Of a stretch of 64,000 nucleotides of DNA, positions 1 to 17,926 are shown in pieces. Each line of letters begins with the position of its first letter. The first letter of the stretch is position 1. Position numbers and translations under genes: made by a program. A model generated the notes under the pieces. That model was given only the letters and a program-made list of their open reading frames with translations, searched no databases and was not told where the DNA came from. The stretch lies in the sequence record MN988522.1; one strand, 5' to 3'.

Positions 1-1
1 A

Positions 2-5425: not shown

Positions 5426-5500
5426 TGTTACGAGGTCGAGGTTTTCGATCTTGAAGAATTCGATTTTTAGAGTACAAGTTTATAAAGAATCTCGTAATAT

Positions 5501-5704: not shown

Positions 5705-5782
5705 GGTCCTGTACGTTCAATTGGATAGACGGCTGGATTTCTACTCCGGAGGTTGGGTGTTCGAGTCACTCCAGGATCGCCA
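5705..5782 (+). tRNA. tRNA-Arg(UCU)
   Basis: Acceptor GGTCCTG/CAGGATC, loop TT-TCT-AC, CCA. Confidence 0.9.
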
Positions 5783-5800
5783 TAAATTGTAGGTTATATT

Positions 5801-6439: not shown

Positions 6440-6876
6440 TTAAAGTACATCTTGGACATAGCTAGTGAGTTGGTTCTTCGTGAGTCATATCGTTTCTCCT
6501 TTCGGTATGAGTGTATGACAAGCTATGAGTTCTGGCATTCTATCTACCTTTAATCCTTTTCTGTAGATAGAATAACGCACGCGTCAAGATGTTATCCTCG
6601 AAAGTCAGACAGAGGATCTCAGTTTTATAATCTAGATAACGATATGCCCGATCGTTATGTTCCAGTAAGATCAAGTCTTCCTCCCAGACGTCACTCATTC
6701 CCCTCTTGAGTTTATCTTAACGCACGCGCTAGATTATAGGTCTCTGAAAACTGGACAGGAGACCATCAGTTCACTAGGGAGTCAGAAGTATGTAATTCCT
6801 TGTCTTACCTGGAGGTCACATGCGGGTGATCTCGGTTACTTTGAGGTTTACTACTTCTGACTCCTGCCGGATTTAT

Positions 6877-6952
6877 TCTAGGTTAGCCAAGTTGGTAAGG
6901 CACGAGTTTTTGGTGCTCGCATACCTAGGTTCGAACCCTAGACCTAGAACCA
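6877..6952 (+). tRNA. tRNA-Gln(UUG)
   Basis: Acceptor TCTAGGT/ACCTAGA, loop TT-TTG-GT, CCA. Confidence 0.92.
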
Positions 6953-6997
6953 CTTTTTAGATGTTGATTAAGTTCCGTCTAACAATGAGAGAATACA

Positions 6998-7255
6998 ATG
7001 AGTAAAGCATCTGAAGTTATCAAGAAGCTGAATGAGACTAAACCTTCAGAAGATCTTCTGAAGAGCGAGGTCCAGGAAATTAAGCAGAAGATGATTAATC
7101 AAGGCATCGTCAGACCTGACTATGCTGTTGAAAGATTTAGTCTGGTTAGTGATAGATTCAGAAATGTCTTGATACACGGTATTGTTCATGGAACAAATAC
7201 TGCAGGATGGAGAGATCAGATTAAAGATTTGAGATCTCAGAATTTGATTAGTTAG
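6998..7255 (+). CDS. hypothetical protein with MSKA...LNE N-terminal motif
   Basis: 85 aa ORF; stop codon overlaps G1 of tRNA-Gly. Confidence 0.7.
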   Translation: MSKASEVIKKLNETKPSEDLLKSEVQEIKQKMINQGIVRPDYAVERFSLVSDRFRNVLIHGIVHGTNTAGWRDQIKDLRSQNLIS

Positions 7256-7329
7256 CGGACGTAACTCAGAGGTAGAGTGCAATCCTTCCAAGTTTGAAGT
7301 CGTGGGTTCGATTCCCATCGTCCGCTCCA
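7255..7329 (+). tRNA. tRNA-Gly(UCC)
   Basis: Acceptor GCGGACG/CGTCCGC, loop CT-TCC-AA, U73, CCA. Confidence 0.93.
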
Positions 7330-7330
7330 T

Positions 7331-7407
7331 GCATCCTTAGCTCAGTTGGTTAGAGCATCAGTTTTACATACTGAGGGTCACTAGTTCGAGCCTAGTAGGA
7401 TGTACCA
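7331..7407 (+). tRNA. tRNA-Val(UAC)
   Basis: Acceptor GCATCCT/AGGATGT, loop TT-TAC-AT, CCA. Confidence 0.95.
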
Positions 7408-7426
7408 GTTATATTAAACTATTCGT

Positions 7427-7502
7427 GGGAGATTAGTTCAGTGGTTAGAACCGTCAGCTCATAACTGATTAAACAGAGGTTCGAATCCTCTATCTCCTAC
7501 CA
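7427..7502 (+). tRNA. tRNA(CAU), elongator Met or Ile2
   Basis: Acceptor GGGAGAT/ATCTCCT, loop CT-CAT-AA, CCA. Confidence 0.88.
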
Positions 7503-7505
7503 AGT

Positions 7506-7582
7506 ACCACCTTAACTCAGATGGATAGAGTACTCGACCGATAATCGAGTTGTCATTGGTTCAAGTCCAATAGGTGGTACCA
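7506..7582 (+). tRNA. tRNA-Ile(GAU), C at position 33
   Basis: Stem CTCGA/TCGAG, loop CC-GAT-AA, CCA. Confidence 0.88.
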
Positions 7583-7600
7583 ACTTTTATTGAGTAGATA

Positions 7601-8188
7601 ATGAAGTGCAGTTATTGTGAAACTGAGTTTAGACATCTGAGTCGACATGTTAGATATTGTCCTCAGAATCCTGACAGAATTGTCAAGTTAAATCAGTTCT
7701 CTAAGGCTGAGTCATTAGGCTTACCTAAGCCGCCATTGTCTGAGAAATCTCGGAGAATGACTACTGAAAGAAATGCATCTCGAGTATGGACTCCAGAGAT
7801 CAGATCTAAATTATCTAAGAGTATGATTAAGTACTTTAAAGATAATCCTGAAGCTCATCCGTACTTAAAGTATCATTCAAGTGGTGAATCATATGCTGAA
7901 GGATTCTTTCGAGAATTCTTTTTAAGTCATGATTTATCATTCAAACAAGAGTTGCAGGTTGGTCTCTATACACTTGACTTCGCATTTGAGGACAAGATGA
8001 TTGATGTAGAGATCAACGGTAACTTTCACTATAATAATCCTGGAATTGTTGAGAAAGATCAACGACGAAGACTCTTCTTGGAAGAGCGTGGATGGACTAT
8101 TATAGAAGTTCGATGGTCTGAGTATAAGAAGATGAATGAGTCAGAGCGATCTGATTATCTGAATTCCTTATTATCTCAACTATCCTGA
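7601..8188 (+). CDS. putative homing endonuclease (Zn finger + DUF559/Vsr-like nuclease)
   Basis: CSYC..H..C; LDFAFEDKMIDVEINGNFHY; GWTIIEVRW. Confidence 0.75.
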   Translation: MKCSYCETEFRHLSRHVRYCPQNPDRIVKLNQFSKAESLGLPKPPLSEKSRRMTTERNASRVWTPEIRSKLSKSMIKYFKDNPEAHPYLKYHSSGESYAEGFFREFFLSHDLSFKQELQVGLYTLDFAFEDKMIDVEINGNFHYNNPGIVEKDQRRRLFLEERGWTIIEVRWSEYKKMNESERSDYLNSLLSQLS

Positions 8189-8264
8189 CGCGGGATGGCG
8201 CAGTCGGTAGCGCGCAAGAGTCATAATCTTGAGGTCGAGGATTCGAGTTCCTCTCCCGCAACCA
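8189..8264 (+). tRNA. initiator-like tRNA-Met(CAU)
   Basis: C1:A72 mismatch (CGCGGGA/TCCCGCA), anticodon CAT, CCA; lacks the three G-C anticodon-stem pairs. Confidence 0.85.
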
Positions 8265-8525
8265 GTTTCAGTTAACGAGGCCACCGTATCTAGATTAATC
8301 TACCTCACAGGTATCTAGATCGTAGTGAGTTTGAGCGGAGCAGTCTTAACTGCATCGTTGTGGTCCCATCGATAATGCGGTCCCGAGATGGGATAGGACT
8401 CTATCTGAGTGCACAAGGATAGATGCACCTAAGCGGTCTCTGCGATGAGATCCACCGCTCCATAATCTGTAATCTTGATGTGAACAGTGTCGTAGATATC
8501 TCATCAGTAATATCGAGTTAATGAG

Positions 8526-9026
8526 ATGATGTATATCCGATACGCTTTATACTTACCAGTTAATCTACTACTTGTACTGTCAGCATATGTGTTCTCACCT
8601 ATTCTAGCAGCACTTTCTCTAATTACAGGTCCGACGCTCCCTGGAGTACTTCAATGGTTCTCTACTACGGATGACAATCTAGACGGTGGAATTCATCAGA
8701 ATGTCTCAGGCTATAAGTCTGGACTGAAAGGATTCTCACTATGGTGGCAACGTACATGTTGGATCTGCAGAAATCCTGCTCATGGATGGCAGTCTAACTT
8801 ACTAGGTATGTCTGTTGATGGATTCGAATTTATCGAGAAGATCGATATTTCTACTCCTAAATGGTATCTGATGAAGAATAATAAGCATACGTTCTTCATG
8901 TGGAAGAAGGATCAACCACTCTTCTCCAAGTATTATCTGAAACTATGGTTCGGATGGCTGAATACTGCATATGATGGTAAGAATCATCATTATGAATTTC
9001 AGATCGGACTGAAGAGTAAAAATTAA
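8526..9026 (+). CDS. phage membrane-anchored hypothetical protein
   Basis: N-terminal hydrophobic segment; WFSTTDDNLDG...W..RNPA motif. Confidence 0.7.
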   Translation: MMYIRYALYLPVNLLLVLSAYVFSPILAALSLITGPTLPGVLQWFSTTDDNLDGGIHQNVSGYKSGLKGFSLWWQRTCWICRNPAHGWQSNLLGMSVDGFEFIEKIDISTPKWYLMKNNKHTFFMWKKDQPLFSKYYLKLWFGWLNTAYDGKNHHYEFQIGLKSKN

Positions 9027-9036
9027 TATAGGTTAA

Positions 9037-9114
9037 GTCGCTATGACGGAGTGGTCCAACGTAATGGTCTGCAAAACCATATAACCGCTGGTTCGAATCC
9101 AGCTAGCGACTCCA
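9037..9114 (+). tRNA. tRNA-Cys(GCA)
   Basis: Acceptor GTCGCTA/TAGCGAC, loop CT-GCA-AA, U73, CCA. Confidence 0.93.
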
Positions 9115-9124
9115 AGGTTAAACT

Positions 9125-9235
9125 ATGAAGTATGTAATCATTCTAGCACTTCTTCTAGCAGGATGTCAATCTGCTGAAGAGCGTTACTATTCAGATTTGT
9201 CTACAGGTGTAGGCATGGTTCTAAAGGATAAATAA
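9125..9235 (+). CDS. small putative lipoprotein (36 aa, not in ORF track)
   Basis: MKYVIILALLLAGCQS: signal peptide with lipobox LAGC; upstream AAGGT. Confidence 0.6.
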   Translation: MKYVIILALLLAGCQSAEERYYSDLSTGVGMVLKDK

Positions 9236-9352
9236 ATGTCAACTATTATTGTTGCAGTTGTAGCATTCATTGCAGGTGGATACGCTAGTAAGAATTTTGG
9301 ATTCGATCTAGTTGAGTATGCCAAGGCTGCTTATAACAAGTTTAAGGCATAA
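9236..9352 (+). CDS. small membrane peptide (38 aa, not in ORF track)
   Basis: [18 protein letters not shown]..., abuts previous stop. Confidence 0.5.
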
Positions 9353-9361
9353 TGCCTTTGT

Positions 9362-9438
9362 CGGAGCGTAGCGCAGCCAGGTAGCGCAATAGTTTTGGGT
9401 ACTATGGGTCGTCTGTTCGAATCAGACCGTTCCGACCA
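9362..9438 (+). tRNA. tRNA-Pro(UGG)
   Basis: Acceptor CGGAGCG/CGTTCCG, loop TT-TGG-GT, CCA. Confidence 0.95.
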
Positions 9439-9440
9439 AT

Positions 9441-9517
9441 ATTCCCTTGGACAAGCGGTTTAAGTCATCTCACTTTCACTGAGAAGATCACGGGTTCAAA
9501 TCCCGTAGGGAATACCA
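9441..9517 (+). tRNA. tRNA-Glu(UUC)
   Basis: Acceptor ATTCCCT/AGGGAAT, loop CT-TTC-AC, CCA. Confidence 0.93.
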
Positions 9518-9522
9518 ATTTC

Positions 9523-9550
9523 AGCGAAGTTAGGCTCTTGTAGCCTTCCT
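9523..9550 (+). promoter_or_regulatory. conserved motif copy 3
   Basis: agcgaa gttaggctcttgt agccttcct. Confidence 0.7.
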
Positions 9551-9615
9551 TCTTGTATCGGTTAGTAGTGTCAATCCGAGCTATTAATGTGAGTATTAAG
9601 TATCGGATTCTATGA

Positions 9616-9712
9616 TCGAGAGTGGTGGAACGGTAGACACATCCAGATAAAAGAGCAGTTTCTGGACGCTACTTAAATATGCGTGCTAGTTCAAGTCTAG
9701 CCTCTCGAACCA
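9616..9712 (+). tRNA. Leu-type (class II) tRNA-like gene with aberrant 13-nt anticodon loop
   Basis: Acceptor TCGAGAG/CTCTCGA, A73, CCA, Leu-type D arm, T arm; TCCAGA/TCTGGA stem closes TAAAAGAGCAGTT. Confidence 0.75.
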
Positions 9713-9746
9713 ATATTATATGCTCATTCTTAGATAGGGATTACCA

Positions 9747-10508
9747 ATGGGTAAATTACATGAAATCCTCGCGGTTGAAGGTGACCTCGTAGGTGTAGCC
9801 AAGAAAGTTACTGAAGAAGCTATCGCTACGTTCAGCAAGCGTGCAGATCACTTCAGTGAGACTACTACTGAACAGAAATACTTTGCAGACGATGAGCAGC
9901 ATCTCAATACGTCTGAATCTAAGGCAATGGTGACCACTGTACCTGACAAGCTCAAGTACATCGTTGATCCTATTGCTAAGTTCTTCGATGCGTACTATTC
10001 GAAGGAAGCTACCAATCAGATCGCTAAGGCTGACGTAGAAGTCAAGGGTACAACGATCTTTGCAGATGTTCCAGCAACGGTTCTCCTAGGTATGGAGACT
10101 AAGCTTCGTGAACTCCGTAAGGTCTATGAATCGATTCCGACTCTCGCTCCTGGTGTATTCTGGGAGAAGGATGTTAATCGTCCGGCAGGTGTATACCGTG
10201 CTCGTGAACCTGAAGTCCGATTCGTTACGAAGAAGACTGTACGTCCGATCACTCTTTCACCTGCTACTGACAAGCATCCTGCTCAGATTGAGAAGGTCAA
10301 TGAAGATCTTCCTGTCGCTAAGAAGACGATTACTACCTGGAGTAGTATGATGTCGTCAGCTGACAAGAGCAAGGTCCTCGAACGTATCGATACTCTGATC
10401 CGTGCAGTTAAGACTGCTCGTCAGCGTGCAAACGGTACTGAGGCAGTATCTGCTTCATCCTTCGGTGATAAGATTTTCGACTTTATCCATCAAGGTATCG
10501 TCGACTAA
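9747..10508 (+). CDS. conserved uncharacterised protein (KLxxxLAVE / ATDKHPAQ family)
   Basis: 253 aa; motifs MGKLHEILAVE, VPATVLLGME, ATDKHPAQIE, AVKTARQRAN recalled from an uncharacterised family. Confidence 0.75.
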   Translation: MGKLHEILAVEGDLVGVAKKVTEEAIATFSKRADHFSETTTEQKYFADDEQHLNTSESKAMVTTVPDKLKYIVDPIAKFFDAYYSKEATNQIAKADVEVKGTTIFADVPATVLLGMETKLRELRKVYESIPTLAPGVFWEKDVNRPAGVYRAREPEVRFVTKKTVRPITLSPATDKHPAQIEKVNEDLPVAKKTITTWSSMMSSADKSKVLERIDTLIRAVKTARQRANGTEAVSASSFGDKIFDFIHQGIVD

Positions 10509-10691
10509 GAATTGAATGTTGAGGCTACCAGCATAGCCTCCATTCTCCGACTCCCATAGGGACAAACTCAGCCTTAAACTTATTGTGAGTATCAAGAATT
10601 TATCTTCTGCTCAAGATAAACAAACTAGCTTTGTATCCCTAAAACTTAGACAAGATTTACCAGATCTAGTCGTAGCATATCTCTATTTTCC

Positions 10692-10777
10692 CGGAAGGTC
10701 GTGAGTTCGAGTCTCATCACCGCACCCAATTACCTACAATTGGACTGATGCGGTGTAGCTCAGTGGTAGAGCGTTCG
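10692..10777 (+). ncRNA. circularly permuted tRNA-like domain within a ~420 nt non-coding region
   Basis: T arm GTGAG-TTCGAGT-CTCAT, then CACCGCA-C-CCA...TGCGGTG acceptor-like stem, then D arm TA-GCTC-AGTGGTA-GAGC. Confidence 0.8.
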
Positions 10778-10962
10778 TTTTATCTTGAAGATATCCTATC
10801 GATGATGACTGTATGAATCTATCGTAACGATTAAATATGCTCCGCGATAGGAGTGTATGTTACATTAACAAGAACAGGGTGGTTCCATGCGGAATGTGGT
10901 TCCACCCACCTCTTCTTATATAAGATCATTCGGATTTTATATAATAAGAATTTGAGGTTTAC

Positions 10963-11250
10963 ATGAGTAAGGCATCAAGATTACTTAGCAAGATCAATGA
11001 ATTGGACGGTGGATCTAAGGACCCACTGGTTCAATCAGGTTGTGCTAAGATTGTAGCTTATTGTCAGAAGAAGAGTCTTAGTGCTACTGAGATTGAGCAG
11101 ATTAAGGATCAGATTCTTGACGACGAGCCTCTTCACAATCATACTGCAGATACACTAGCTGCAATCGGTCTTGATATGAATATCAAGTCTGAGCTTGTAG
11201 CGATTGGTCTCAGTAGTGATGAAGCTGATGCGATTATGAATGTAACCTAA
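10963..11250 (+). CDS. hypothetical protein with MSKA...INE N-terminal motif
   Basis: 95 aa, RBS GAGGT. Confidence 0.75.
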   Translation: MSKASRLLSKINELDGGSKDPLVQSGCAKIVAYCQKKSLSATEIEQIKDQILDDEPLHNHTADTLAAIGLDMNIKSELVAIGLSSDEADAIMNVT

Positions 11251-11257
11251 CAGACAT

Positions 11258-11331
11258 GCTCCTATAGTTAAGTGGTATAACTCCTGTTTTGTAATCAGGG
11301 TTCCTCAGTTCGATTCTGGGTGGGAGCACCA
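11258..11331 (+). tRNA. tRNA-Thr(UGU)
   Basis: Acceptor GCTCCTA/TGGGAGC, loop TT-TGT-AA, CCA. Confidence 0.92.
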
Positions 11332-11383
11332 TGATTTCTTGAATCCTAACTCATAGTGAGTTAGAGATAACAAGGAAGATAAA

Positions 11384-11680
11384 ATGAGTGATGAAGTTAA
11401 TAAGACTGTCGTAACTAGAGAAGAACATCGAGGTACTGCTTGTAAGTACTATGATACTCGTGGTAAAGCATACGATGCTATTATCACTGAAGTATGGGGA
11501 CCTCAATGCGTCAACCTTGTCTATGTCAATGATGTAGAAGGTCAGAAAGATTCTTATGGTCAGAAATTGATCAGATCATGTTCTGTGATGCATGGTAGTG
11601 TTCAGCAAGCTCATGGCAACTATTGGATGTTACCAGGAGAGACTCGAGTTTCTAAATATGTTCATGATTCAGCTATTTAA
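11384..11680 (+). CDS. hypothetical protein
   Basis: 98 aa, RBS AAGGA. Confidence 0.7.
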   Translation: MSDEVNKTVVTREEHRGTACKYYDTRGKAYDAIITEVWGPQCVNLVYVNDVEGQKDSYGQKLIRSCSVMHGSVQQAHGNYWMLPGETRVSKYVHDSAI

Positions 11681-11745
11681 TTAACTTCTGTGATCTTCCG
11701 ACCTTGACGCGACGAAGTAGCAGATAACTTATAAACTTTCTTGTT

Positions 11746-12333
11746 ATGTTTTATACTATCTATCGAATAACCAACAATGTTAACAGTAAGATATATGTTG
11801 GTATGCACCAGACTACTAATTTAGATGACGGTTATATGGGATCGAGCAGATTATTGTTCAATGCTATGAAGAAGCACGGTCCTGATAACTTCTCTAAAGA
11901 GATTCTACATGTCTTTGATAATAAAGAAGACATGTTTAGTATGGAAGCACAGATAGTAGACGAACAATTTGTTAAAAGATCTGATACATACAACCTAAAG
12001 ACAGGTGGAGTAGGATCTTTTAGCTACATTAATTCATCTCCTGAATTTCGACAAAGGTCAATTTCAAGAATTCGTGAATTATGTAAGTCTGATACACCGT
12101 ATCGTAGAATTCAATCTAATAAATTGAAAGATGTTCGATACGATTTCACTGGTCATAAGCATACTGAAGAATCGATCTCTAAGATGAAAATATCTAAGGT
12201 CGGTCACGGAGAGGGTTCTTCGAATTCTCAGTATGGGACGATCTGGATTAATAATGGAGTGAAGAACTCTAAACTTAAATCTAATCTACCTATTCCAGAT
12301 GGTTGGAGTAGAGGTAGAAAGATGGGCTTGTAG
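11746..12333 (+). CDS. GIY-YIG homing endonuclease (Seg-like) with NUMOD3
   Basis: TIYRITN..KIYVGMH..DGYMGS; GHKHTEESISKMK; WINNG..GWSRGR. Confidence 0.9.
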   Translation: MFYTIYRITNNVNSKIYVGMHQTTNLDDGYMGSSRLLFNAMKKHGPDNFSKEILHVFDNKEDMFSMEAQIVDEQFVKRSDTYNLKTGGVGSFSYINSSPEFRQRSISRIRELCKSDTPYRRIQSNKLKDVRYDFTGHKHTEESISKMKISKVGHGEGSSNSQYGTIWINNGVKNSKLKSNLPIPDGWSRGRKMGL

Positions 12334-12398
12334 TGATAACGGGAGCACGATGCCTTTGCACGGCATAGGACAGGGTTCGATTCCCTGCTAGTCCACCA
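12324..12398 (+). tRNA. tRNA-Ala(UGC)
   Basis: G3.U70 pair, loop TT-TGC-AC, CCA; first 10 nt overlap the GIY-YIG gene. Confidence 0.92.
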
Positions 12399-12450
12399 CA
12401 TTAGGTCGTATCAACCTGAGGTTAACCGTAGTTACTCAAACTGATACAAT

Positions 12451-12537
12451 GGGATTTCAGACGTGTTGGAGTGCGATCGGCAGACTGTAAATCTGTCCTC
12501 TTAGAGCTACTAGGTTCGAATCCTAGAAGTCCCACCA
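12451..12537 (+). tRNA. tRNA-Tyr(GUA)
   Basis: Stem GCAGA/TCTGT, loop CT-GTA-AA, variable arm, CCA; atypical D arm. Confidence 0.85.
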
Positions 12538-12542
12538 TATTT

Positions 12543-12584
12543 ATAGCCTCATATCGGAGCAATCTGGTATGAGGCTATTTCTTT
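12543..12584 (+). terminator. intrinsic terminator
   Basis: ATAGCCTCATA...TATGAGGCTAT hairpin followed by TTCTTT. Confidence 0.75.
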
Positions 12585-12658
12585 CATGTTAAAGAGAGGG
12601 GCGATGTATTATGATCGTTACGACATCTTCTAGGTAAAACAACCTAGGAGTATAAAGC

Positions 12659-12961
12659 ATGAAGTCGCATTATATTAAGTCTGAGAAGTTTCGTTGGAAT
12701 CGAGACGATAAGATCGAATATATTTACAAGCTCAGAGCTGGTAATTATTACCGTGATCTTAAGACCTTTCAGGAGATCTCTGCGAATGAGTTCGTTAAGT
12801 TTGATCCTGACTGTATCGAGTATAAGATTCCTCCTCGTTATGGACGACTTAATCATTACTTGAACAAGTGGAATCTTGAGAGATTTCCTTCTAAGTCTTA
12901 TAAGAAGTCTTGGAAGTTTGCTCACAGATGCCGTAAGCAATGGATGATCAATCTTGAATAA
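12659..12961 (+). CDS. hypothetical protein
   Basis: 100 aa, RBS AGGAG. Confidence 0.65.
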   Translation: MKSHYIKSEKFRWNRDDKIEYIYKLRAGNYYRDLKTFQEISANEFVKFDPDCIEYKIPPRYGRLNHYLNKWNLERFPSKSYKKSWKFAHRCRKQWMINLE

Positions 12962-13139
12962 GATGACATTCGATGATTGGTGTGATCAGGTCGATACTGT
13001 AGCGAGTAAAGCTATGGGAGGACCTGAATCATACACTAAGGCCACTGGCAGAGAATGCTGGATGGATATGTATAACGATGGATTCACTCCTGAAGATGCA
13101 TGGACTGAAGAGTCTTTATGTATTCAGGAGTCCCTTTAA
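12954..13139 (+). CDS. hypothetical protein
   Basis: 61 aa acidic ORF overlapping previous gene. Confidence 0.6.
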   Translation: MNKMTFDDWCDQVDTVASKAMGGPESYTKATGRECWMDMYNDGFTPEDAWTEESLCIQESL

Positions 13140-13157
13140 TTCTAGATGGATAAGTTA

Positions 13158-13301
13158 ATGAATTTTCTCGGTAAAATCTTTTCTGCAGATTCTAAGAAGC
13201 TGGATGACGCGAAGGCTCTTCTTGCAGAAGTAACTGCATCGAAGAATCGTATCATCAATAATGATCTTAAGGGTCGTATTGAGACTTTCTTGAGTGCATG
13301 A
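13158..13301 (+). CDS. small hypothetical protein (47 aa, not in ORF track)
   Basis: MNFLGKIFSADSKKLDDAKALLAEV...; alternative in-frame ATG at 13146. Confidence 0.5.
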   Translation: MNFLGKIFSADSKKLDDAKALLAEVTASKNRIINNDLKGRIETFLSA

Positions 13302-13340
13302 GATAGAAGGCTAAAAGACGCGAATTATTCGCCTAGATTG

Positions 13341-13368
13341 AGCGAACTTAGCGTCTGATAGCCTTCCT
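13341..13368 (+). promoter_or_regulatory. conserved motif copy 4
   Basis: agcgaa cttagcgtctgat agccttcct, 17 nt before tRNA-Asn. Confidence 0.7.
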
Positions 13369-13385
13369 TCTTTGTCAGACGGTGA

Positions 13386-13461
13386 TGGCTAGTAGCTCAG
13401 TTGGTAGAGCATTGCACTGTTAATGCGACGGTCGTAGGTTCGAGCCCTACCTAGTCAGCCA
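13386..13461 (+). tRNA. tRNA-Asn(GUU)
   Basis: Acceptor TGGCTAG/CTAGTCA, loop CT-GTT-AA, G73, CCA. Confidence 0.95.
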
Positions 13462-13484
13462 GTCTGCTTATAAAGGATTCTTAG

Positions 13485-13691
13485 ATGGAACGTGTATATA
13501 GTTTAGTTTATGTTGCTATCATTACAGCAGGTGTAGTCGCAGGTATCACAGCACTCACTCTACCTTTGTACTATGGTACGATTGATAGTAATCGTAAACA
13601 ATCTGAGTTGTCAAGTAAGTGTGTTGACTCAGGAGGGTCCTGGATCGTAGGTCCTAATGGATACTACCAGTGTATTGCTGGTCGTAAGTAA
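13485..13691 (+). CDS. small membrane protein
   Basis: N-terminal TM helix; C-terminal CVDSGGSW...C. Confidence 0.65.
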   Translation: MERVYSLVYVAIITAGVVAGITALTLPLYYGTIDSNRKQSELSSKCVDSGGSWIVGPNGYYQCIAGRK

Positions 13692-13700
13692 TGTGAATAA

Positions 13701-13792
13701 GGATAGTTGGCTGAGTCTGGTCTAAGGCGCTCGACTTGAAATCGAGAGGACGTGAGAGCGTTCCGTGGGTTCGAATCCTACACTATCCGCCA
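13701..13792 (+). tRNA. tRNA-Ser(UGA)
   Basis: Acceptor GGATAGT/ACTATCC, loop CT-TGA-AA, long variable arm, CCA. Confidence 0.95.
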
Positions 13793-13810
13793 TATTTATT
13801 ATTGAGTATA

Positions 13811-14197
13811 ATGGATCAAATAGTAAAGAAAAAGAGGACTAGACGTCCTGTTTCTTTAGAGACTAGAATGAAATTATCTGCTGCTCTTAAGGGTAAACCT
13901 CAGAGTAAAGTTTCTAATGAAGAGATTTTTGCAGATAATACTACTCATCCTAGACATCGTATTAAAGAAAGAATAATTCGAGATAATCTTATTCCATACG
14001 AGTGTGCAATCTGTGAAAATGATGGTACATGGAATGGTGAACCTTTATCTTTACATCTAGACCATGAAAATGGTAAGAATAATGATAATCGTCTTGAGAA
14101 TCTTAGATTCTTATGTCCTAACTGTCATAGTCAAACAGATACTTATGCAGGTAAGAATAAGAAACGTAAGAGAATCAAGAGAGAAGAGCGTGTTTAG
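13811..14197 (+). CDS. HNH homing endonuclease
   Basis: CAIC..LHLDHENG..NDNRLENLRFLCPNCH; start moved from 13736 (inside tRNA-Ser) to ATG 13811. Confidence 0.9.
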   Translation: MDQIVKKKRTRRPVSLETRMKLSAALKGKPQSKVSNEEIFADNTTHPRHRIKERIIRDNLIPYECAICENDGTWNGEPLSLHLDHENGKNNDNRLENLRFLCPNCHSQTDTYAGKNKKRKRIKREERV

Positions 14198-14261
14198 TTC
14201 AATGGTAGAATGCGAGTCTCCAAAACTTGATATGAGAGTTCGATTCTCTCAGCACGTGCCA
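14188..14261 (+). tRNA. tRNA-Trp(CCA)
   Basis: Loop CT-CCA-AA, G73, CCA; first 10 nt overlap the HNH gene. Confidence 0.9.
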
Positions 14262-14297
14262 ATTCTAGATATTAAATAAACACTTGGATAAGAAGAA

Positions 14298-14942
14298 ATG
14301 TCAAAAGCAAGAGATTTACTTAATACCTTGAATGAAGCTGATGATTGGAATATTCACAAGAAAGAGTTGAAGAAGGCTGGATTTGATCTCCATCCTAATC
14401 ATCACGCTAATGTGAATATCAATCGTAACAACTATCCTCAGAATCGTGATATCTATACGGGTAAAATGAGTAATGGTCATACGATGGTTATTACTCAATT
14501 AACTCCGATTGATATGGATCGATACGCATCTGTTAAGGATGCTTCTGGTAAATTTATCAAGCACTACTATGTAGCTCCTGTTAAACCTACACTGAGTAAA
14601 AGTCCTGTATTAAAGTCTACAGCGATCGGTAATGATCCTAAGACAGTACTTGAAGAAATCAAAGCAGCTATGAGAATGGTTCCAGAAGGACGTCAGGCTA
14701 CCTTTAGATCTGTTGAACAGAATGGTAAGTACTATGAGTTCGATGTCAGATACTGGGGAAGCTGGGAAGTTCCTGATGGTGAAGACGATGATGGAGACTA
14801 CGACTTTGAAGTCTTGACATCTAAATCGTCTAAGTCACTTCAGAACATTGTTGAGCCTATCATTAAGAAATATCCAAGTCTAGATATCTACTATCAAACT
14901 GGAGAGAAGAATTATATTACTGTTCATGCTACTGTAAAGTAG
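14298..14942 (+). CDS. hypothetical protein with MSKA...LNE N-terminal motif
   Basis: 214 aa. Confidence 0.75.
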   Translation: MSKARDLLNTLNEADDWNIHKKELKKAGFDLHPNHHANVNINRNNYPQNRDIYTGKMSNGHTMVITQLTPIDMDRYASVKDASGKFIKHYYVAPVKPTLSKSPVLKSTAIGNDPKTVLEEIKAAMRMVPEGRQATFRSVEQNGKYYEFDVRYWGSWEVPDGEDDDGDYDFEVLTSKSSKSLQNIVEPIIKKYPSLDIYYQTGEKNYITVHATVK

Positions 14943-14952: not shown

Positions 14953-15037
14953 GTCGGTATGGCGGAATTGGTAGACGCCCTGGTTTTAGGTACCAGTGTC
15001 GAAAGACGTGTAGGTTCGAGTCCTATTACCGACACCA
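14953..15037 (+). tRNA. tRNA-Leu(UAG)
   Basis: Acceptor GTCGGTA/TACCGAC, loop TT-TAG-GT, variable arm, A73, CCA. Confidence 0.95.
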
Positions 15038-15043
15038 AATTAT

Positions 15044-15178
15044 GACTTGATGTTGCGAAAGAAATGGTTACTTCGTATTCCAAACGAGAAATGTAGGTAT
15101 CGAATCCTGCTATCCTAATAGGATATCGTCTAAGATAGGACGCTAAAATTTCCATTTCTGACACTATCTCATCAAGTC
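15044..15178 (+). ncRNA. Y RNA-like element Y1 (permuted tRNA module)
   Basis: GACTTGATG-TTGCGA ... ATCT-CATCAAGTC; inner GAAATGG/CCATTTC; T arm, closed acceptor, D arm. Confidence 0.75.
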
Positions 15179-15186
15179 TCATATTC

Positions 15187-15269
15187 AGATCTTGACGTTG
15201 CGACTAGTATCGGATACTTCGCTTTGGTTGCTAAAAACTCCGATGCAATATACTATCTCGTCAAGATCT
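15187..15269 (+). ncRNA. Y RNA-like element Y2 (short, no tRNA module)
   Basis: AGATCTTGACG-TTGCGA ... ATCT-CGTCAAGATCT. Confidence 0.7.
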
Positions 15270-15279
15270 TTCAGTTTAT

Positions 15280-15424
15280 CCTAACGTTGCGAATTAAACA
15301 GTTACTTCGATATCAAGCAGAAGGTCAATGGTTCGAATCCATTCATGCGACACGCGTTGCATGTAGCTCAGTTGGTTAGAGCGTCCGCCACCACAAGATC
15401 TGTTTAAGTCATTATCTCGTTAGG
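15280..15424 (+). ncRNA. Y RNA-like element Y3 (YrlA-like)
   Basis: CCTAACG-TTGCGA ... ATCT-CGTTAGG; TTAAACAG/CTGTTTAA; T arm AATGG-TTCGAAT-CCATT, closed acceptor, D arm GCTC/GAGC. Confidence 0.82.
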
Positions 15425-15433
15425 TCCTTATAA

Positions 15434-15578
15434 CCTAGTGTTGCGATCGGTACAACTTCATCGCATTGTAAGCCCTGTGTCATTGGTTCAAATCCAATTC
15501 CTCCGTCCATCTATCGGAGGATAGCTCAGTCTGGTAGAGCAAGGAAAGTATGTTGTATCAATATACCATCTCACTAGG
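15434..15578 (+). ncRNA. Y RNA-like element Y4 (YrlA-like)
   Basis: CCTAGTG-TTGCGA ... ATCT-CACTAGG; T arm, TCCTCCG-T-CCA...CGGAGGA, D arm. Confidence 0.82.
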
Positions 15579-15716
15579 ATCCTTATCTCATCCACCAACC
15601 TCGGTGTAAGAGTGGAAAGAGTTACGTGATCGTATGAGAATACGATCACAGTCATTTAGGTCATGTACCATGTGTACAAGGATCATTCGAAGGTGCTCGT
15701 CATCTTCAGCAAATAA

Positions 15717-15860
15717 TGTAGAGTTGCGAATATATCAAGTTCATCGCTTACCATATACCAAGCGGGTAGCTCAGTGGTTAGAGCACTAGGATGTAACAGT
15801 CGTAGAGGTCGTCGGTTCGAATCCGACTCTAACTTCTTGATATAGACTTATCTCTCTACA
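15717..15860 (+). ncRNA. Y RNA-like element Y5 (tRNA arms in normal D-then-T order)
   Basis: TGTAGAG-TTGCGA ... ATCT-CTCTACA; TATATCAAG/CTTGATATA; D arm 15767-15784, T arm 15811-15827. Confidence 0.78.
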
Positions 15861-15869
15861 ACTTTTATA

Positions 15870-16004
15870 TGTACTGTTGCGACTAATACGGTTACTTCGT
15901 TGCAAATGAAACATAGGTTCGAATCCTATCCAGAGGATTGTCGTAAGATGACATCTGGCTGAGCATTGGTGAGCTCATCTCCGTATTAACTACATCTCAG
16001 TACA
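15870..16004 (+). ncRNA. Y RNA-like element Y6
   Basis: TGTACTG-TTGCGA ... ATCT-CAGTACA; TAATACGG/CCGTATTA; T arm ATAGG-TTCGAAT-CCTAT. Confidence 0.78.
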
Positions 16005-16014
16005 ATTACAATTC

Positions 16015-16171
16015 GTACCGTTGCGAATGATATGAATACATCGCTGTAGAACCGACGTCGTAAGACATGCTAGTTCAAGTCTAGCTCTCCGTCCCAATAC
16101 TATGACGGAGATGGTGAAATTGGTAGACACATCGGTAGATAAATCTTCATATCGGCTTACAATCTCGGTAT
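16015..16171 (+). ncRNA. Y RNA-like element Y7 (permuted class II/Leu-type module)
   Basis: GTACCG-TTGCGA ... ATCT-CGGTAT; variable-arm hairpin, T arm, TCTCCGT-C-CCA...ACGGAGA, Leu-type D arm. Confidence 0.8.
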
Positions 16172-16180
16172 ATCTTAGAC

Positions 16181-16205
16181 GCTATGTTGCGATAGTCCTC
16201 ATAGC
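16181..16205 (+). promoter_or_regulatory. minimal Y-motif hairpin (Y8) in Ro60 leader
   Basis: GCTATG-TTGCGA-TAGTCCT-CATAGC, 20 nt before the Ro60 ATG. Confidence 0.55.
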
Positions 16206-16225
16206 ATTATCATAGGGAAAATGTC

Positions 16226-17794
16226 ATGGCTTCGATCAATAATAAGTCAGTTGCTAATCTTGCACGTACGGTTGCTCCTAAGGCAGTTGTAGCACCTCGT
16301 ACATTCACTGGTTTATCTCATAACATTCGTAACAATAATGGTGCGATGGCGTATGATATCACTCCTATCGAGCAATTGAGACGTACTGTTCTCTCTTGCA
16401 TGCTCTGGGAGGATTCTGCATATGAGTCTGGTGAACAGATTGCTAATCGTATTGAAAGATTGATCGGAGAGTGTGATCCCTCTGATGTAGCACATCTTGC
16501 TCGTGAAGCAAGACATATCATGAAGCTACGTCATGTTCCTCTCTTTATGTGCATCACGATGCTGAAGTATCCCGAACATAAGAAATATGTTCGTAAGACA
16601 CTCGCATCAGTTATTGAGCGTCCTGATGAGCTTGGTCAAGCTCTCGCTCTCTACTGGAAGGATGCTCTTTCTCCTGCTCGTACTACTGAAGATACTGAAA
16701 TCGGACCTCGAGTTACTTACGTTTCTCAGAGAAAGTCTGATCTGAATCTTCCTCTCCAACTACGTAGAGGTCTTGAAGATGCTCTACAGAAGTTTGACTC
16801 TTATCAGTTGAAGAAGTACCTTATGAAGGACAAGCCTGTCTCTATGGCTGACATTCTTCGTATCGTCCACCCTAAGGGTAAGACTGATGAGATCAAAGCT
16901 ACCTATGGCGAAATCGTCAAGGGTACTGCTACTGCACCTGATACATGGGAGTCTCGTCTCTCATCTTCTGGTAGATCTGAGAAAGCTACAATCTTCACAG
17001 ATATGCTCGAACGTAACAAATTAGGTGCAATGGCTCTACTGAAGAATCTGCGTGGTATGACTGAGGCTGGTGTTGATACCAATCTTATTAATACTGCGAT
17101 TCAGAAGATGAATACTGAACGTGTTCTTCCTTTCAGATTCCTCACAGCTGCTCGTCATGCTCCTCAGTTCAAGTCTAGTCTCGGTGAGGCTATGCTAAAA
17201 TCTCTGAAGGACATTCAGAATCTGCCTGGTCATACAGTACTACTGATTGACATCTCAGGTAGTATGGGTGGACGTATTTCAGGTAAGTCTGATCTGAGAC
17301 GTATTGATGCTGCAGCTGCTATTGCTATCATGTTGAAGGAAATTTGTCAGTCTTCTGATATGTTTGTCTTCAATTATGGTACGTATCAAGTACGTAACGA
17401 TAACGTCTTCTGCGTGAATCAACCTACTGCTAACAATCACGGATACTCCAGGATTGTTGAGAGTACGAGGATCTACAATTACGAAGAAGATGCTGTAGTG
17501 AAGAGAGGATTTGATCTATCAGATCTTATCGTCAATTCAGTAGTTGGTGGAACTGATCTCCAGCAAGCTGTCAGTTACATCAATAATACTGTAGAGTATG
17601 ATCGTATGATTATCTTTACAGATGACGAATCATCTACTGTTCCGCCAGCTCCTAGAGGTCTTTCCTATTCGATCAATGTATCGACTGGAAACTATGGAGT
17701 GACGTACGGTGATTATGTCCACATCAACGGATTCTCTGAAGGTGTGATCGGCTATGTCACTGAGTACGACAAGTACGTGAAGAGTCAGAATTAA
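16226..17794 (+). CDS. rsr: Ro60/TROVE-domain RNA-binding protein (TROVE + VWA)
   Basis: EQLRRTVLSCMLWED, LRHVPL, ERPDEL, LQKFDSYQLKKY, TWESRLS, LGAMALLKNLR, RVLPFRF, VWA LIDISGSM, GGTD. Confidence 0.92.
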   Translation: MASINNKSVANLARTVAPKAVVAPRTFTGLSHNIRNNNGAMAYDITPIEQLRRTVLSCMLWEDSAYESGEQIANRIERLIGECDPSDVAHLAREARHIMKLRHVPLFMCITMLKYPEHKKYVRKTLASVIERPDELGQALALYWKDALSPARTTEDTEIGPRVTYVSQRKSDLNLPLQLRRGLEDALQKFDSYQLKKYLMKDKPVSMADILRIVHPKGKTDEIKATYGEIVKGTATAPDTWESRLSSSGRSEKATIFTDMLERNKLGAMALLKNLRGMTEAGVDTNLINTAIQKMNTERVLPFRFLTAARHAPQFKSSLGEAMLKSLKDIQNLPGHTVLLIDISGSMGGRISGKSDLRRIDAAAAIAIMLKEICQSSDMFVFNYGTYQVRNDNVFCVNQPTANNHGYSRIVESTRIYNYEEDAVVKRGFDLSDLIVNSVVGGTDLQQAVSYINNTVEYDRMIIFTDDESSTVPPAPRGLSYSINVSTGNYGVTYGDYVHINGFSEGVIGYVTEYDKYVKSQN

Positions 17795-17801
17795 GTAGTG
17801 A

Positions 17802-17829
17802 GAATTGGGAGTGAAATACCTCCCAATTC
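17802..17829 (+). terminator. hairpin after Ro60
   Basis: GAATTGGGAG/CTCCCAATTC stem; weak U tail. Confidence 0.5.
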
Positions 17830-17842: not shown

Positions 17843-17926
17843 GCCCACTTGATGGAATTGGTAGACATAAGGCACTTAAAATGCCTAGCTTAATGCGTAC
17901 CGGTTCGAGTCCGGTAGTGGGTACCA
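17843..17926 (+). tRNA. tRNA-Leu(UAA)
   Basis: Acceptor GCCCACT/AGTGGGT, loop CT-TAA-AA, A73, CCA. Confidence 0.95.

What the first reader, a model, noticed from the sequence alone, without database searches (positions are those of the whole stretch)
15044..17794. Phage Ro60 gene preceded by a tandem array of seven Y-RNA-like genes plus a minimal eighth motif
Seen: eight elements in 1.16 kb share one frame: stem-G-TTGCGA ... ATCT-C-stem (TCCT-C in Y8). The closing stems all differ in sequence yet pair (GACTTGATG/CATCAAGTC, CCTAACG/CGTTAGG, CCTAGTG/CACTAGG, TGTAGAG/CTCTACA, TGTACTG/CAGTACA...), which is internal covariation. Y1-Y7 have a second stem followed by a TWCWTCG motif. Y1, Y3, Y4, Y6 and Y7 carry tRNA arms in permuted order (T arm, closed acceptor stem, D arm). 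The array ends 20 nt before a TROVE+VWA gene. Established: bacterial Ro60 (Rsr) binds adjacent Y RNAs, and YrlA-class Y RNAs mimic tRNA with this permuted layout; the well-studied loci have only a few Y RNAs. Inference: this is an expanded, diversified Ro60-Y RNP system inside a phage tRNA island. Its anticodon-less tRNA mimics could act as decoys for host anticodon nucleases, tether Ro60 to different partners, or support tRNA repair and quality control. No RtcB is visible in this window.
Basis: partly seen in the sequence, partly recalled or inferred. Interest (0 to 1): 0.93.

Follow-up and report, generated by a model that had tools for sequence, protein, structure and literature searches.

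The report
Phage Ro60 gene with Y-RNA array
A 207-kb Rhizobium phage carries, unannotated, seven different small "Y RNA" genes in a row (most imitating tRNAs) plus a minimal eighth binding site just in front of the gene for the ring-shaped RNA-binding protein Ro60. A survey here shows that such multi-gene Y-RNA arrays are the rule for this branch of Ro60, in phages and in bacteria.

Summary
Window 15044-16206 (+) holds eight units in one frame (stem-G-UUGCGA ... AUCU/UCCU-C-stem), ending 20 nt before a Ro60 (TROVE+vWA) gene at 16226-17794. A covariance model built only from other phages' units finds seven of the eight at exactly my unit coordinates. Y3, Y4, Y6 and Y7 (Y1 weakly) are circularly permuted tRNA mimics, which is the YrlA layout. 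Y5 has tRNA arms in natural order, Y2 is short, and Y8 is only the Ro box inside the Ro60 leader.

So this is an unannotated Ro60-Y RNA locus in Rhizobium phage RHph_TM40. It is not an exceptional expansion. Of 84 other phage loci, 82 have at least one unit (median 3, maximum 8 in CcrColossus). In 80 bacterial loci, 76 have units (typically 4).

What does stand out:
- The window is the only array in its own Ro60 subfamily built entirely on the UUGCGA/AUCU box.
- Its Ro60 has a unique 24-residue insert beside the presumed Y-RNA-binding helix.
- The tRNA-like heads diverge about six times faster than the docking modules.
- Two units encode N-CCA in the closed acceptor loop.

Function is inferred: adaptor RNAs that link Ro60 to tRNA-binding host factors. 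The anticodon-nuclease decoy idea is poorly supported.

The parts
14953..15037 (+). tRNA-Leu(TAG) with encoded CCA, 6 nt upstream of Y1. The array continues the tRNA cluster on the same strand.
   Evidence: ARAGORN; Rfam tRNA 53.7 bits
15044..15178 (+). Y1. Helix 1 is 9 bp (GACUUGAUG/CAUCAAGUC), box UUGCGAA...CUAUCU, helix 2 is AGAAAUGG/CCAUUUCU, followed by UUACUUCG. The head has degenerate T arm, closed stem and D arm.
   Evidence: Independent model R1 66.0 bits, E 4e-15, full length. ARAGORN calls the re-permuted form only at a relaxed threshold.
15187..15269 (+). Y2. Short unit of 83 nt: helix 1 of 11 bp, box, helix 2 of 8 bp and a 24-nt loop, with no tRNA arms (YrlB-like).
   Evidence: R1 13.8 bits, E 0.002 with filters off, at unit coordinates.
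15280..15424 (+). Y3. Permuted tRNA mimic: V arm, T arm, 8-bp closed acceptor-like stem, UA, D arm. The D arm is identical to the phage tRNA-Val D arm (19 of 19).
   Evidence: R1 92.1 bits, E 7e-22. Rfam YrlA 36.2 bits, below the gathering score of 69. ARAGORN calls the re-permuted form.. Compensatory change in the T stem against phage Y65.
15434..15578 (+). Y4. Permuted tRNA mimic. A 7-bp acceptor-like stem is followed directly by U-CCA in the loop. The T arm matches tRNA-Ile at 20 of 21 positions.
   Evidence: R1 65.3 bits. Rfam YrlA 37.3 bits..
15579..15716 (+). 138-nt gap in the array with three hairpins and no Ro box. It is structured, and its role is unknown (terminator/promoter or another ncRNA).
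   Evidence: Fold z = -3.07. Two compensatory pairs in hairpin 15689-15707 against Y65. No Rfam hit.
15717..15860 (+). Y5. Ro module plus a tRNA-like body in natural order (D arm, anticodon-like arm with 3-bp stem and 14-nt loop, T arm). Helix 2 takes the place of the acceptor stem, as in the Yrn1 topology.
   Evidence: Rfam tRNA 33.9 bits at 15765-15829. R1 20.4 bits, E 5e-5 with filters off. Compensatory U-A to C-G change in the AC-like stem against Y65.
15870..16004 (+). Y6. Permuted tRNA mimic with a long extended closed stem. The T arm matches tRNA-Tyr and tRNA-Met.
   Evidence: R1 50.6 bits. ARAGORN calls the re-permuted form..
16015..16170 (+). Y7. Permuted class-II (Leu-like) tRNA mimic with an extra helix 3 (ACCGA/UCGGU). 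A 7-bp acceptor-like stem is followed by C-CCA.
   Evidence: R1 33.5 bits. ARAGORN default calls the re-permuted form without any trimming.. D-stem compensatory change against Y65.
16180..16206 (+). Y8. Minimal Ro-box hairpin (GCUAUG-UUGCGAUAGUCCU-CAUAGC) in the Ro60 leader, 8 nt before the AGGGA Shine-Dalgarno-like site. It is a candidate autoregulatory operator or a remnant.
   Evidence: Not significant with R1 (2.4 bits). Identical in Y65, TM39 and TM30.
16226..17794 (+). Ro60 (TROVE/HEAT ring plus vWA with the MIDAS motif DxSxS at D342, S344, S346). It has lineage-specific inserts at residues 9-29, 151-174 and 392-425.
   Evidence: Pfam TROVE 2.8e-13. PHROG 850 8e-37. PDB phmmer best match is phiLo Ro60, 9L5Y/9KOP. 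AF2 pLDDT 82, and the top 13 Foldseek hits are all Ro60. Inserts.
17802..17829 (+). Hairpin after the Ro60 stop codon, terminator-like but with a weak U tract.
17843..17926 (+). tRNA-Leu(TAA) downstream of Ro60.

Best explanation
Identity (about 0.9): window 15044-16206 encodes seven Y RNAs and one minimal Ro-box hairpin. They belong to the Ro60 gene that follows, in Rhizobium phage RHph_TM40 (Cuauhnahuacvirus).

Anatomy. Each RNA has two modules.
- A constant docking module: a closing helix ending in G-C; an asymmetric internal loop, 5'-UUGCGA(A) opposite 3'-AUCU; a second helix of 7-9 bp; then U(U/A)C(A/U)UCG.
- A variable head. Four to five heads are circularly permuted tRNA mimics (T arm, closed acceptor stem, D arm). 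One is a tRNA body in natural order. One is a short loop.

Inferred steps.
- The array is co-transcribed with the flanking tRNAs and cut at the 8-10-nt AU-rich spacers by host RNA-processing enzymes (about 0.6).
- Each RNA docks one Ro60 ring through the CGA-containing box (about 0.8, by homology to phiLo, Xenopus and Deinococcus).
- The heads link Ro60 to tRNA-binding host proteins. The best precedent is a 3'-5' exoribonuclease such as PNPase, in a RYPER-like particle. This would redirect or damp host structured-RNA decay and quality control during infection (about 0.35-0.4).
- Y4 and Y7 may be opened by RNase P to expose their encoded CCA ends (about 0.3).
- Y8 may let Ro60 repress its own translation (about 0.25).
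For: - Motif, pairing and covariation.
- Independent model: R1 was built from 34 units of other phages. In that alignment 28 of 32 pairs carry compensatory changes. R1 finds Y3, Y1, Y4, Y6 and Y7 at 92-33 bits, and Y5 and Y2 with filters off, all at exact unit ends.
- Rfam YrlA hits Y3 and Y4 below threshold, at E about 1e-6.
- Re-permuted Y3, Y4, Y6 and Y7 are called tRNA by ARAGORN.
- Ro60 identity.
- Same architecture elsewhere: 233 of 233 hits in phage loci and 289 of 290 in bacterial loci lie on the Ro60 strand.
- Modular evolution between TM40 and Y65: docking modules diverge 1.4%, heads 7.9% (Fisher p = 1e-6), and the Ro60 CDS 1.4%. Stems carry compensatory changes.
[quoted passage not shown] A CGAA stem-bulge-stem is sufficient for phiLo Ro60 binding, with a PNPase complex (PMC12135203).
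Against: - No expression, binding or phenotype data exist for this phage.
- No unit reaches the Rfam YrlA gathering score (36-37 bits against 69).
- The box differs from the UGG[CU]G/UUCC box used by nearly all units of the same Ro60 subfamily, so binding by this Ro60 is assumed.
- The promoter and terminator scan is at chance level.
- Y8 is not detected by the model. Minimal Ro-box hairpins are not enriched on the Ro60 strand overall (14 against 11).
- In phiLo the complex attenuates PNPase rather than activating it, so the direction of the effect is open.
Confidence: 0.8

Rival explanations
1. tRNA decoys or sponges. The anticodon-less tRNA mimics soak up host tRNA-targeting defence or toxin enzymes, or tRNA-modifying and processing enzymes. 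Ro60 serves only to stabilise them.
For: The heads copy arms of the phage's own tRNAs (Y3 D arm = tRNA-Val, Y4 T arm = tRNA-Ile, Y7 D loop = tRNA-Leu type). The heads diverge fast. The locus sits in a tRNA island. N-CCA is encoded in Y4 and Y7.
Against: There is no anticodon stem-loop, so the units are poor decoys for anticodon nucleases. The same arrays sit upstream of Ro60 in 76 of 80 bacterial genome loci (Bradyrhizobium, Acidobacteriaceae and others). The architecture is therefore not a phage-specific counter-defence. Y2 and most units in other loci lack tRNA arms.
Confidence: 0.12
2. One long structured leader. The array is not cut into separate RNAs. It acts as a cis-acting 5' UTR carrying eight Ro60 sites, and it titrates Ro60 and sets its translation.
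For: The array is on the same strand and contiguous with the gene. No convincing internal promoters or terminators were found. Y8 lies next to the ribosome-binding site. Minimal boxes overlap the start codon in L017 and L022.
Against: In some loci the units lie downstream of Ro60 (L059, L064) or kilobases away (L008). Published Y RNAs are discrete RNAs (PMC4201824). The short AU-rich spacers resemble those of tRNA clusters.
Confidence: 0.07
3. Decayed tandem tRNA genes or tRNA pseudogenes, with no Ro60 relationship.
For: The T and D arms are tRNA-like, and tandem tRNA pairs do score with model R1 (7260-7388 and 7430-7568). A box-less permuted element exists at 10667-10813.
Against: An invariant box and frame are kept in all eight units while the stems covary. 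Docking modules are conserved at 1.4% while heads drift. Homologous units sit next to Ro60 in 158 of 164 other loci.
Confidence: 0.02

Closest known systems
YrlA / YrlB Y RNAs of Salmonella Typhimurium and Mycobacterium smegmatis (Chen et al. 2014, PMC4201824; Rfam RF02553)
   Same: Encoded next to Ro60. Closing stem with a conserved CGA(A)-containing 5' motif. YUAY at the start of the V region. tRNA-like head in the order T arm, closed acceptor stem, D arm. A short tRNA-less partner, like Y2. In M. smegmatis, a 7-bp acceptor stem is cut by RNase P and given CCA.
   Different: There are seven or eight units instead of two. The box is UUGCGA/AUCU. Scores reach only about half the Rfam gathering score. 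CCA is already encoded in two units. One unit has natural-order arms. There is no rtcBA/RtcR context.
Thermus phage phiLo Ro60 with Yrl1/Yrl2 (PMC12135203; PDB 9KOP, 9L5Y)
   Same: A phage Ro60 with Y-like RNAs directly upstream. The CGAA stem-bulge-stem is the binding site. It is the best sequence and fold match among solved structures.
   Different: phiLo has two simple stem-bulge-stem RNAs and no reported tRNA-like heads. Fold-aligned identity to the window's Ro60 is only 20%. The window's Ro60 has a 24-residue insert next to the helix that aligns with the Yrl-binding helix alpha8.
Caulobacter phage CcrColossus Ro60 locus (listed among the YrlA-bearing phages of Chen et al. 2014)
   Same: Eight tandem units directly upstream of a Ro60 that is 38.5% identical by tblastn. 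They mix short and tRNA-like heads.
   Different: The box is UGGCG(U/C)AG...GUUCCC. The locus is GC-rich, has longer spacers, and is not inside a large tRNA island. I found no paper that describes its array.
Deinococcus radiodurans Yrn1 (RYPER: Rsr-Y RNA-PNPase)
   Same: The model for the tether function. Its T and D features are in the opposite order to YrlA and it has an anticodon-like arm, as in Y5 (PMC4201824).
   Different: Yrn1 keeps both strands of a metazoan-like Ro helix, and only two Y RNAs are known there.
Metazoan Y RNAs (2-4 per vertebrate species)
   Same: A terminal stem with a bulged Ro60-binding helix (GGUCCGA) and a variable loop that recruits partners.
   Different: They have no tRNA-like domain, are separate Pol III genes, and are not in an operon-like array with Ro60.

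Membership tests
Ro60 / Rsr (TROVE) protein | TROVE domain detectable by sequence | tested here: met
   Pfam PF05731 2.8e-13, 50.3 bits against a cutoff of 23, though only residues 237-309 are matched. PHROG 850 8.4e-37 over residues 30-474.
Ro60 / Rsr (TROVE) protein | HEAT-repeat ring with an inserted vWA domain (fold) | tested here: met
   AF2 model pLDDT 82.4, pTM 0.79. The 13 best Foldseek PDB hits are all Ro60 (9KOP, 9L5Y, 1YVP, 2I91, 2NVO, 9NEN and others), with TM 0.53-0.67.
Ro60 / Rsr (TROVE) protein | MIDAS motif DxSxS in the vWA domain | tested here: met
   D342, S344 and S346 (DISGSM) are invariant in alignments of 5, 47 and 55 homologues.
Ro60 / Rsr (TROVE) protein | Binds Y RNA and misfolded RNA | not testable with these tools
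   Needs EMSA or RIP.
Y RNA, YrlA class (RF02553) | Encoded within a few kb of Ro60 | tested here: met
   The units lie 20-1182 nt upstream on the same strand.
Y RNA, YrlA class (RF02553) | 5'/3' closing stem with a conserved 5' motif (GNCGAAN0-1G, CGAA core) in a bulge or internal loop | tested here: met
   All eight units have stem-G-UUGCGA. Y1, Y3, Y5 and Y7 have CGAA; Y2, Y4, Y6 and Y8 have CGAC or CGAU. The first base of the published motif is U here, not G (motif).
Y RNA, YrlA class (RF02553) | tRNA-like domain in the order V, T arm, closed acceptor stem, D arm | tested here: met
   Met for Y3, Y4, Y6 and Y7 (ARAGORN calls the re-permuted forms). Weak for Y1. Not met for Y2 and Y8, which have no arms, or for Y5, which has natural order.
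Y RNA, YrlA class (RF02553) | Reaches the Rfam gathering score (69 bits) | tested here: not met
   Y4 scores 37.3 and Y3 36.2 bits; the others are not reported. The related phage loci examined also stay below it (30-56 bits), so the Rfam model under-covers this branch.
Y RNA, YrlA class (RF02553) | Homology to Ro60-adjacent units of other genomes under an independent covariance model | tested here: met
   R1 (no window sequences in the model): Y3 92.1, Y1 66.0, Y4 65.3, Y6 50.6, Y7 33.5, Y5 20.4 and Y2 13.8 bits. Y8 is not significant.
Y RNA, YrlA class (RF02553) | Discrete stable transcripts bound by Ro60; tRNA-type modifications | not testable with these tools
   No transcriptome data were available for this phage.
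Canonical tRNA gene | Cloverleaf with an open acceptor stem and an anticodon loop | tested here: not met
   ARAGORN finds nothing in the native units. Only Y5's core matches Rfam tRNA positions 6-65, without an acceptor stem.

The most novel reading that the evidence does not exclude
The array is a library of interchangeable adaptors for a single Ro60 ring. Each head imitates a different tRNA identity class, for example the Leu-like class II Y7 and the tRNA-Val-type D arm of Y3. Some heads (Y4, Y7) would be opened by RNase P to give nicked, CCA-ended, possibly chargeable tRNA mimics. Each RNA would then deliver Ro60 to a different tRNA-handling enzyme. The minimal Y8 box would let Ro60 shut off its own translation once free protein exceeds free Y RNA. 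The uniform UUGCGA/AUCU box together with the 24-residue Ro60 insert would make the phage particle orthogonal to a host Rsr-Y RNA system that uses UGGUG/UUCC.
Probability: 0.15. Interest if true: 0.8.

Novelty: new variant of a known kind. Interest (0 to 1): 0.6.

Why it matters
Bacterial and phage Ro60-Y RNA particles are known, but what the tRNA-like head does is still unclear. The studied systems have only two Y RNAs each.

This locus, and the roughly 160 related loci surveyed here, show that one Ro60 is commonly served by a tandem family of 3-8 Y RNAs. The members share a docking module and have fast-evolving heads. This has several consequences:
- It changes the picture from one protein with one or two RNAs to a protein with a set of adaptors.
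- It offers a natural series for finding the partners of the heads.
- It shows that standard annotation (GenBank, and Rfam at its gathering score) misses these genes entirely.

For phage biology, it adds an RNA-protein system embedded in a tRNA island of a culturable Rhizobium phage, which can be tested genetically.

Tried and rejected
- A generic scan for GNCGA plus any closing stem was useless: 93 and 97 hits on the two strands. I replaced it with a scan requiring box, 3' box and anchor (166 hits against 6 on the opposite strand) and then with a covariance model.
- Rfam at gathering threshold finds no Y RNA in the window.
- Blast of units against each other gives nothing beyond the motifs, so the paralogues are old or strongly diversified.
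- No unit is a simple duplicate of one extant phage tRNA; the acceptor stems do not match.
- The idea that the window's copy number is exceptional was rejected by the surveys.
- The idea that the UUGCGA box is unique was rejected. YUGCGA(A) boxes with GAUCU, UAUCU or UUCU 3' boxes occur in L090 and L175, next to Ro60 proteins only 26-29% identical, and in L182 and L183, where no Ro60 was fetched.
- Minimal Ro-box hairpins are not enriched on the Ro60 strand in general (14 against 11).
- Neither the phage search nor the metagenome scan found a relative at intermediate distance. The only close relatives are the 97-100% identical Rhizobium phages.
- I searched for a host Rhizobium Ro60 on plasmids and found none.
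- RNA-repair genes: Pfam on 14 ORFs (10 in 1-14300, 4 beside the array) shows homing endonucleases, an SNase-like protein, DUFs and NAD-dependent DNA ligase, but no RtcB, Rnl or Pnkp. GenBank annotation of the first 50 kb of the genome is mostly 'hypothetical'. The rest of the genome was not examined.


Full report
**Where the window comes from.** The region 15000-17800 is 100% identical to Rhizobium phage RHph_TM40 and four sister phages. It is 99.3-99.8% identical to TM39 and TM30, and 97% identical to RHph_Y65 (genus Cuauhnahuacvirus, Kleczkowskaviridae; complete genomes about 207 kb). GenBank annotates a 'TROVE domain-containing protein' and the two flanking tRNA-Leu genes. It annotates nothing in the 1.19 kb between tRNA-Leu(TAG) and the TROVE gene. 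The window holds 20 tRNA genes on the + strand.

**The observation.** GTTGCGA occurs eight times on the + strand between 15052 and 16192. Only 4.4 copies are expected for the whole 64 kb on both strands. Each copy is preceded by 5-11 nt that are complementary to the bases following an ATCT (TCCT in the last unit). This defines the units:

| Unit | Coordinates |
|---|---|
| Y1 | 15044-15178 |
| Y2 | 15187-15269 |
| Y3 | 15280-15424 |
| Y4 | 15434-15578 |
| Y5 | 15717-15860 |
| Y6 | 15870-16004 |
| Y7 | 16015-16170 |
| Y8 | 16180-16206 |

- On the six pairs next to the box, all 48 cells pair and five of six pairs change on both sides. The covariation score is 1.006 against 0.257 in shuffles (0 of 500), and slid registers pair only 27-50%.
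- Y1-Y7 have a second helix of 7-9 bp followed by T[AT]C[AT]TCG.
- Spacers are 8, 10, 9, 138, 9, 10 and 9 nt, and are AU-rich.
- Y8 ends 20 nt before the ATG at 16226.

**The protein.** ORF 16226-17794 encodes 522 residues.
- It matches Pfam TROVE (2.8e-13) and, weakly, Ro60-vWA.
- It matches PHROG 850 'RNA-binding protein' at 8e-37.
- Among solved structures, the best sequence match is the Ro60 of Thermus phage phiLo.
- An AlphaFold2 model built on 55 homologues has pLDDT 82 and pTM 0.79. The 13 best PDB fold matches are all Ro60 structures: phiLo, Xenopus, human and Deinococcus.
- The MIDAS residues D342, S344 and S346 are invariant.

**Are the units Y RNAs?**
- Rfam's YrlA model hits Y4 (37.3 bits) and Y3 (36.2 bits) at E about 1e-6 in a local search. 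This is far below its gathering score of 69.
- The same model also stays below threshold on the CcrColossus, Bambus and Xanthomonas phage loci. So I built an independent model.
- A structure-and-motif scanner found 166 units on the Ro60 strand of 85 phage loci, against 6 on the opposite strand.
- I aligned 34 tRNA-like units from other phages. RNAalifold gave a consensus in which 28 of 32 pairs carry compensatory changes: helix 1, a bulged U, two invariant G-C pairs, helix 2, T arm, closed stem and D arm. This became model R1.
- R1 contains no window sequence. It finds Y3 (92.1 bits), Y1 (66.0), Y4 (65.3), Y6 (50.6) and Y7 (33.5) full length at exactly my unit boundaries. With filters off it also finds Y5 (20.4 bits, E 5e-5) and Y2 (13.8 bits, E 0.002). 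Y8 is not significant.

The features Chen et al. list for YrlA are present (PMC4201824). These are a conserved CGA(A)-containing 5' motif, YUAY at the start of the V region, and the order T arm, closed acceptor-like stem, D arm.

**The tRNA mimicry.** I cut each unit in the closed-stem loop and capped helix 2 with an artificial 7-nt loop. With the linker after the D arm trimmed to one base, ARAGORN then calls Y3, Y4 and Y6 as tRNAs at default settings. Y7 is called with no trimming, using its extra helix ACCGA/UCGGU. Y1 is called only at a relaxed threshold. The native units are never called.
- Y5 is different. Its D arm, anticodon-like arm and T arm are in natural order, and helix 2 replaces the acceptor stem (Rfam tRNA 33.9 bits, positions 6-65). 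This is the topology described for Deinococcus Yrn1.
- The arms resemble the phage's own tRNAs: the Y3 D arm equals tRNA-Val (19 of 19), the Y4 T arm matches tRNA-Ile (20 of 21), and the Y7 D loop is of the tRNA-Leu type. No unit is a copy of a single tRNA.
- In Y4 and Y7 the 7-nt 3' strand of the closed stem is followed by N-CCA, as in the phage's tRNA genes, all of which encode CCA. In other phages 9 of 72 T-loop-bearing units do the same, where 1 in 64 is expected by chance.
- This fits either an origin from tandem tRNA genes or maturation by RNase P to a CCA end, as shown for M. smegmatis YrlA.

**Evolution within the genus.** Between TM40 and Y65 the docking modules differ at 6 of 429 positions (1.4%). 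This equals the Ro60 coding sequence (22 of 1569). The heads differ at 43 of 541 positions (7.9%; Fisher p = 1e-6). Changes in stems are compensatory:
- Y3 T stem, A-U to C-G.
- Y5 anticodon-like stem, U-A to C-G.
- Y7 D stem, U-A to G-C.

**Is the array unusual?** Less than it first seems.
- R1 over 84 other phage loci (Ro60 proteins at least 36% identical by tblastn) gives 233 hits, all on the Ro60 strand. The per-locus distribution is 0:2, 1:10, 2:28, 3:25, 4:10, 5:4, 6:4 and 8:1, with a median of 3. The maximum is CcrColossus with eight tandem units.
- In 80 bacterial genome loci (Bradyrhizobium, Acidobacteriaceae, Hyphomonadaceae, a Rhizobium MAG and others), R1 gives 290 hits, 289 of them on the Ro60 strand. 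My scanner gives 271 against 11. There are typically four units, and up to seven, within only 2.5 kb, with spacers of 5-10 nt.
- So tandem Y-RNA arrays are a trait of this Ro60 subfamily. In the paper library I could search, I found no description of arrays of this size. Chen et al. report 355 YrlA in 276 genomes, and phiLo has two. The two reviews of the field were not held in the library.

**What is particular here.**
- All eight units use UUGCGA...AUCU. Of 271 bacterial units, 263 use UGGUG or UGGCG with UUCC, as do nearly all phage units. In the consensus structure, the first of the two invariant G-C pairs of the box is replaced here by U·U.
- The box type is not unique. It recurs beside Ro60 proteins only 26-29% identical (L090, L175), and in L182 and L183, where no Ro60 was fetched.
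- Compared with 73 homologues, the window's Ro60 has three private inserts. One is 24 residues long (151-174), is predicted disordered, and lies directly before helix 177-187. In a low-confidence stretch of the sequence alignment, that helix corresponds to the phiLo helix carrying R137, K141 and K142, which contact Yrl2. Co-evolution of box and protein is an inference.
- The window has the largest number of units with both T and D arms among the loci compared.

**Y8.** It is only helix 1 plus the box, lies 8 nt before an AGGGA Shine-Dalgarno-like site, and is identical in all sequenced relatives. In phiLo a minimal stem-bulge-stem binds Ro60 at 17 nM, so binding is plausible and would suggest autoregulation. 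Two other loci (L017, L022) have a box hairpin over the start codon. Such hairpins are not enriched overall, however. The hypothesis is weak.

**Mechanism.**
- Shown: sequence, structure, family relationship and context.
- Inferred by homology: each RNA docks Ro60 through the box.
- Inferred from context: the RNAs are co-transcribed and processed with the tRNA cluster.
- Inferred by analogy (Deinococcus and Salmonella RYPER, phiLo Ro60-Yrl-PNPase): the heads connect Ro60 to tRNA-binding host proteins, most likely an exoribonuclease.
- The anticodon-nuclease decoy proposal is weakened by the lack of anticodon loops and by the presence of the same arrays in bacterial genome assemblies.

Noticed in passing
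window 10667-10813 (+), in the unannotated intergenic stretch 10510-10963: A ninth permuted tRNA-like RNA in a Y-RNA-like frame: helix 1 UAGUCGU/AUGACUG, helix 2 AUAUCU/AGAUAU, T arm, 7-bp closed stem followed by C-CCA, and D arm. It has no UUGCGA box. R1 scores it 39.1 bits. Against phage Y65 (87% identical here) at least six pairs change compensatorily, and C-CCA is kept.
   Followed up: partly
window 15579-15716: The 138-nt gap in the middle of the array is itself a conserved structured RNA. It has three hairpins, a fold z-score of -3.07, and two compensatory pairs against Y65. It has no Ro box and no Rfam match. It may separate two transcription units.
   Followed up: partly
L005 3732-4933 (Caulobacter phage CcrColossus); L078; L144, L157 (Hyphomonadaceae genomes): Eight (CcrColossus) and six to seven tandem Y-like units lie upstream of Ro60. 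Across 164 phage and bacterial loci the typical number is 3-4. This looks like a general, apparently undescribed property of this Ro60 subfamily.
   Followed up: yes
window Y4 15499-15502, Y7 16093-16096; 9 units in L005, L006, L034, L042, L045, L059, L072, L074: N-CCA is encoded directly after a 7-nt acceptor-like 3' strand, inside the closed-stem loop of the tRNA-like Y units. This occurs about eight times more often than chance. It suggests either RNase P opening to a CCA end or an origin from tandem CCA-encoding tRNA genes.
   Followed up: partly
window 16226-17794 (protein residues 9-29, 151-174, 392-425): Three inserts are private to this Ro60 among 74 homologues. The 151-174 insert is predicted disordered and abuts the helix that aligns with the Yrl-binding helix of phiLo Ro60. 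The protein also differs at 24 of 119 columns that are at least 90% conserved in the others.
   Followed up: partly
L175 5198-5660 (metagenome contig Ga0164315_10006119): An AT-rich contig has three UUGCG-box Y-like units interleaved with a tRNA-Leu-like sequence (not checked with a tRNA finder). They lie upstream of a Ro60 homologue only 29% identical, separated from it by what looks like a small ORF. This is a second lineage in which Y RNAs and tRNA-like genes share one cluster.
   Followed up: no
L017 2974-3008 and L022 2969-3001: A hairpin carrying a UGGCG...UUCC box overlaps the Ro60 start codon (AUG-GCG). This could be a translational operator, or it could be a by-product of conserved coding sequence.
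   Followed up: no
window 5801-6436, 7601-8185, 11746-12330, 13736-14197, 4569-4988: The tRNA island is interspersed with homing-endonuclease-type ORFs (DUF559/RAP, GIY-YIG SegE-like, and an HNH-like ORF judged by eye only) and an SNase-like nuclease.
   Followed up: no
L006 8789-9046 (Brevundimonas phage Bambus): Rfam finds a permuted tmRNA (57.9 bits, above the gathering score) about 2.4 kb downstream of that phage's Ro60. It is not annotated in the record.
   Followed up: no
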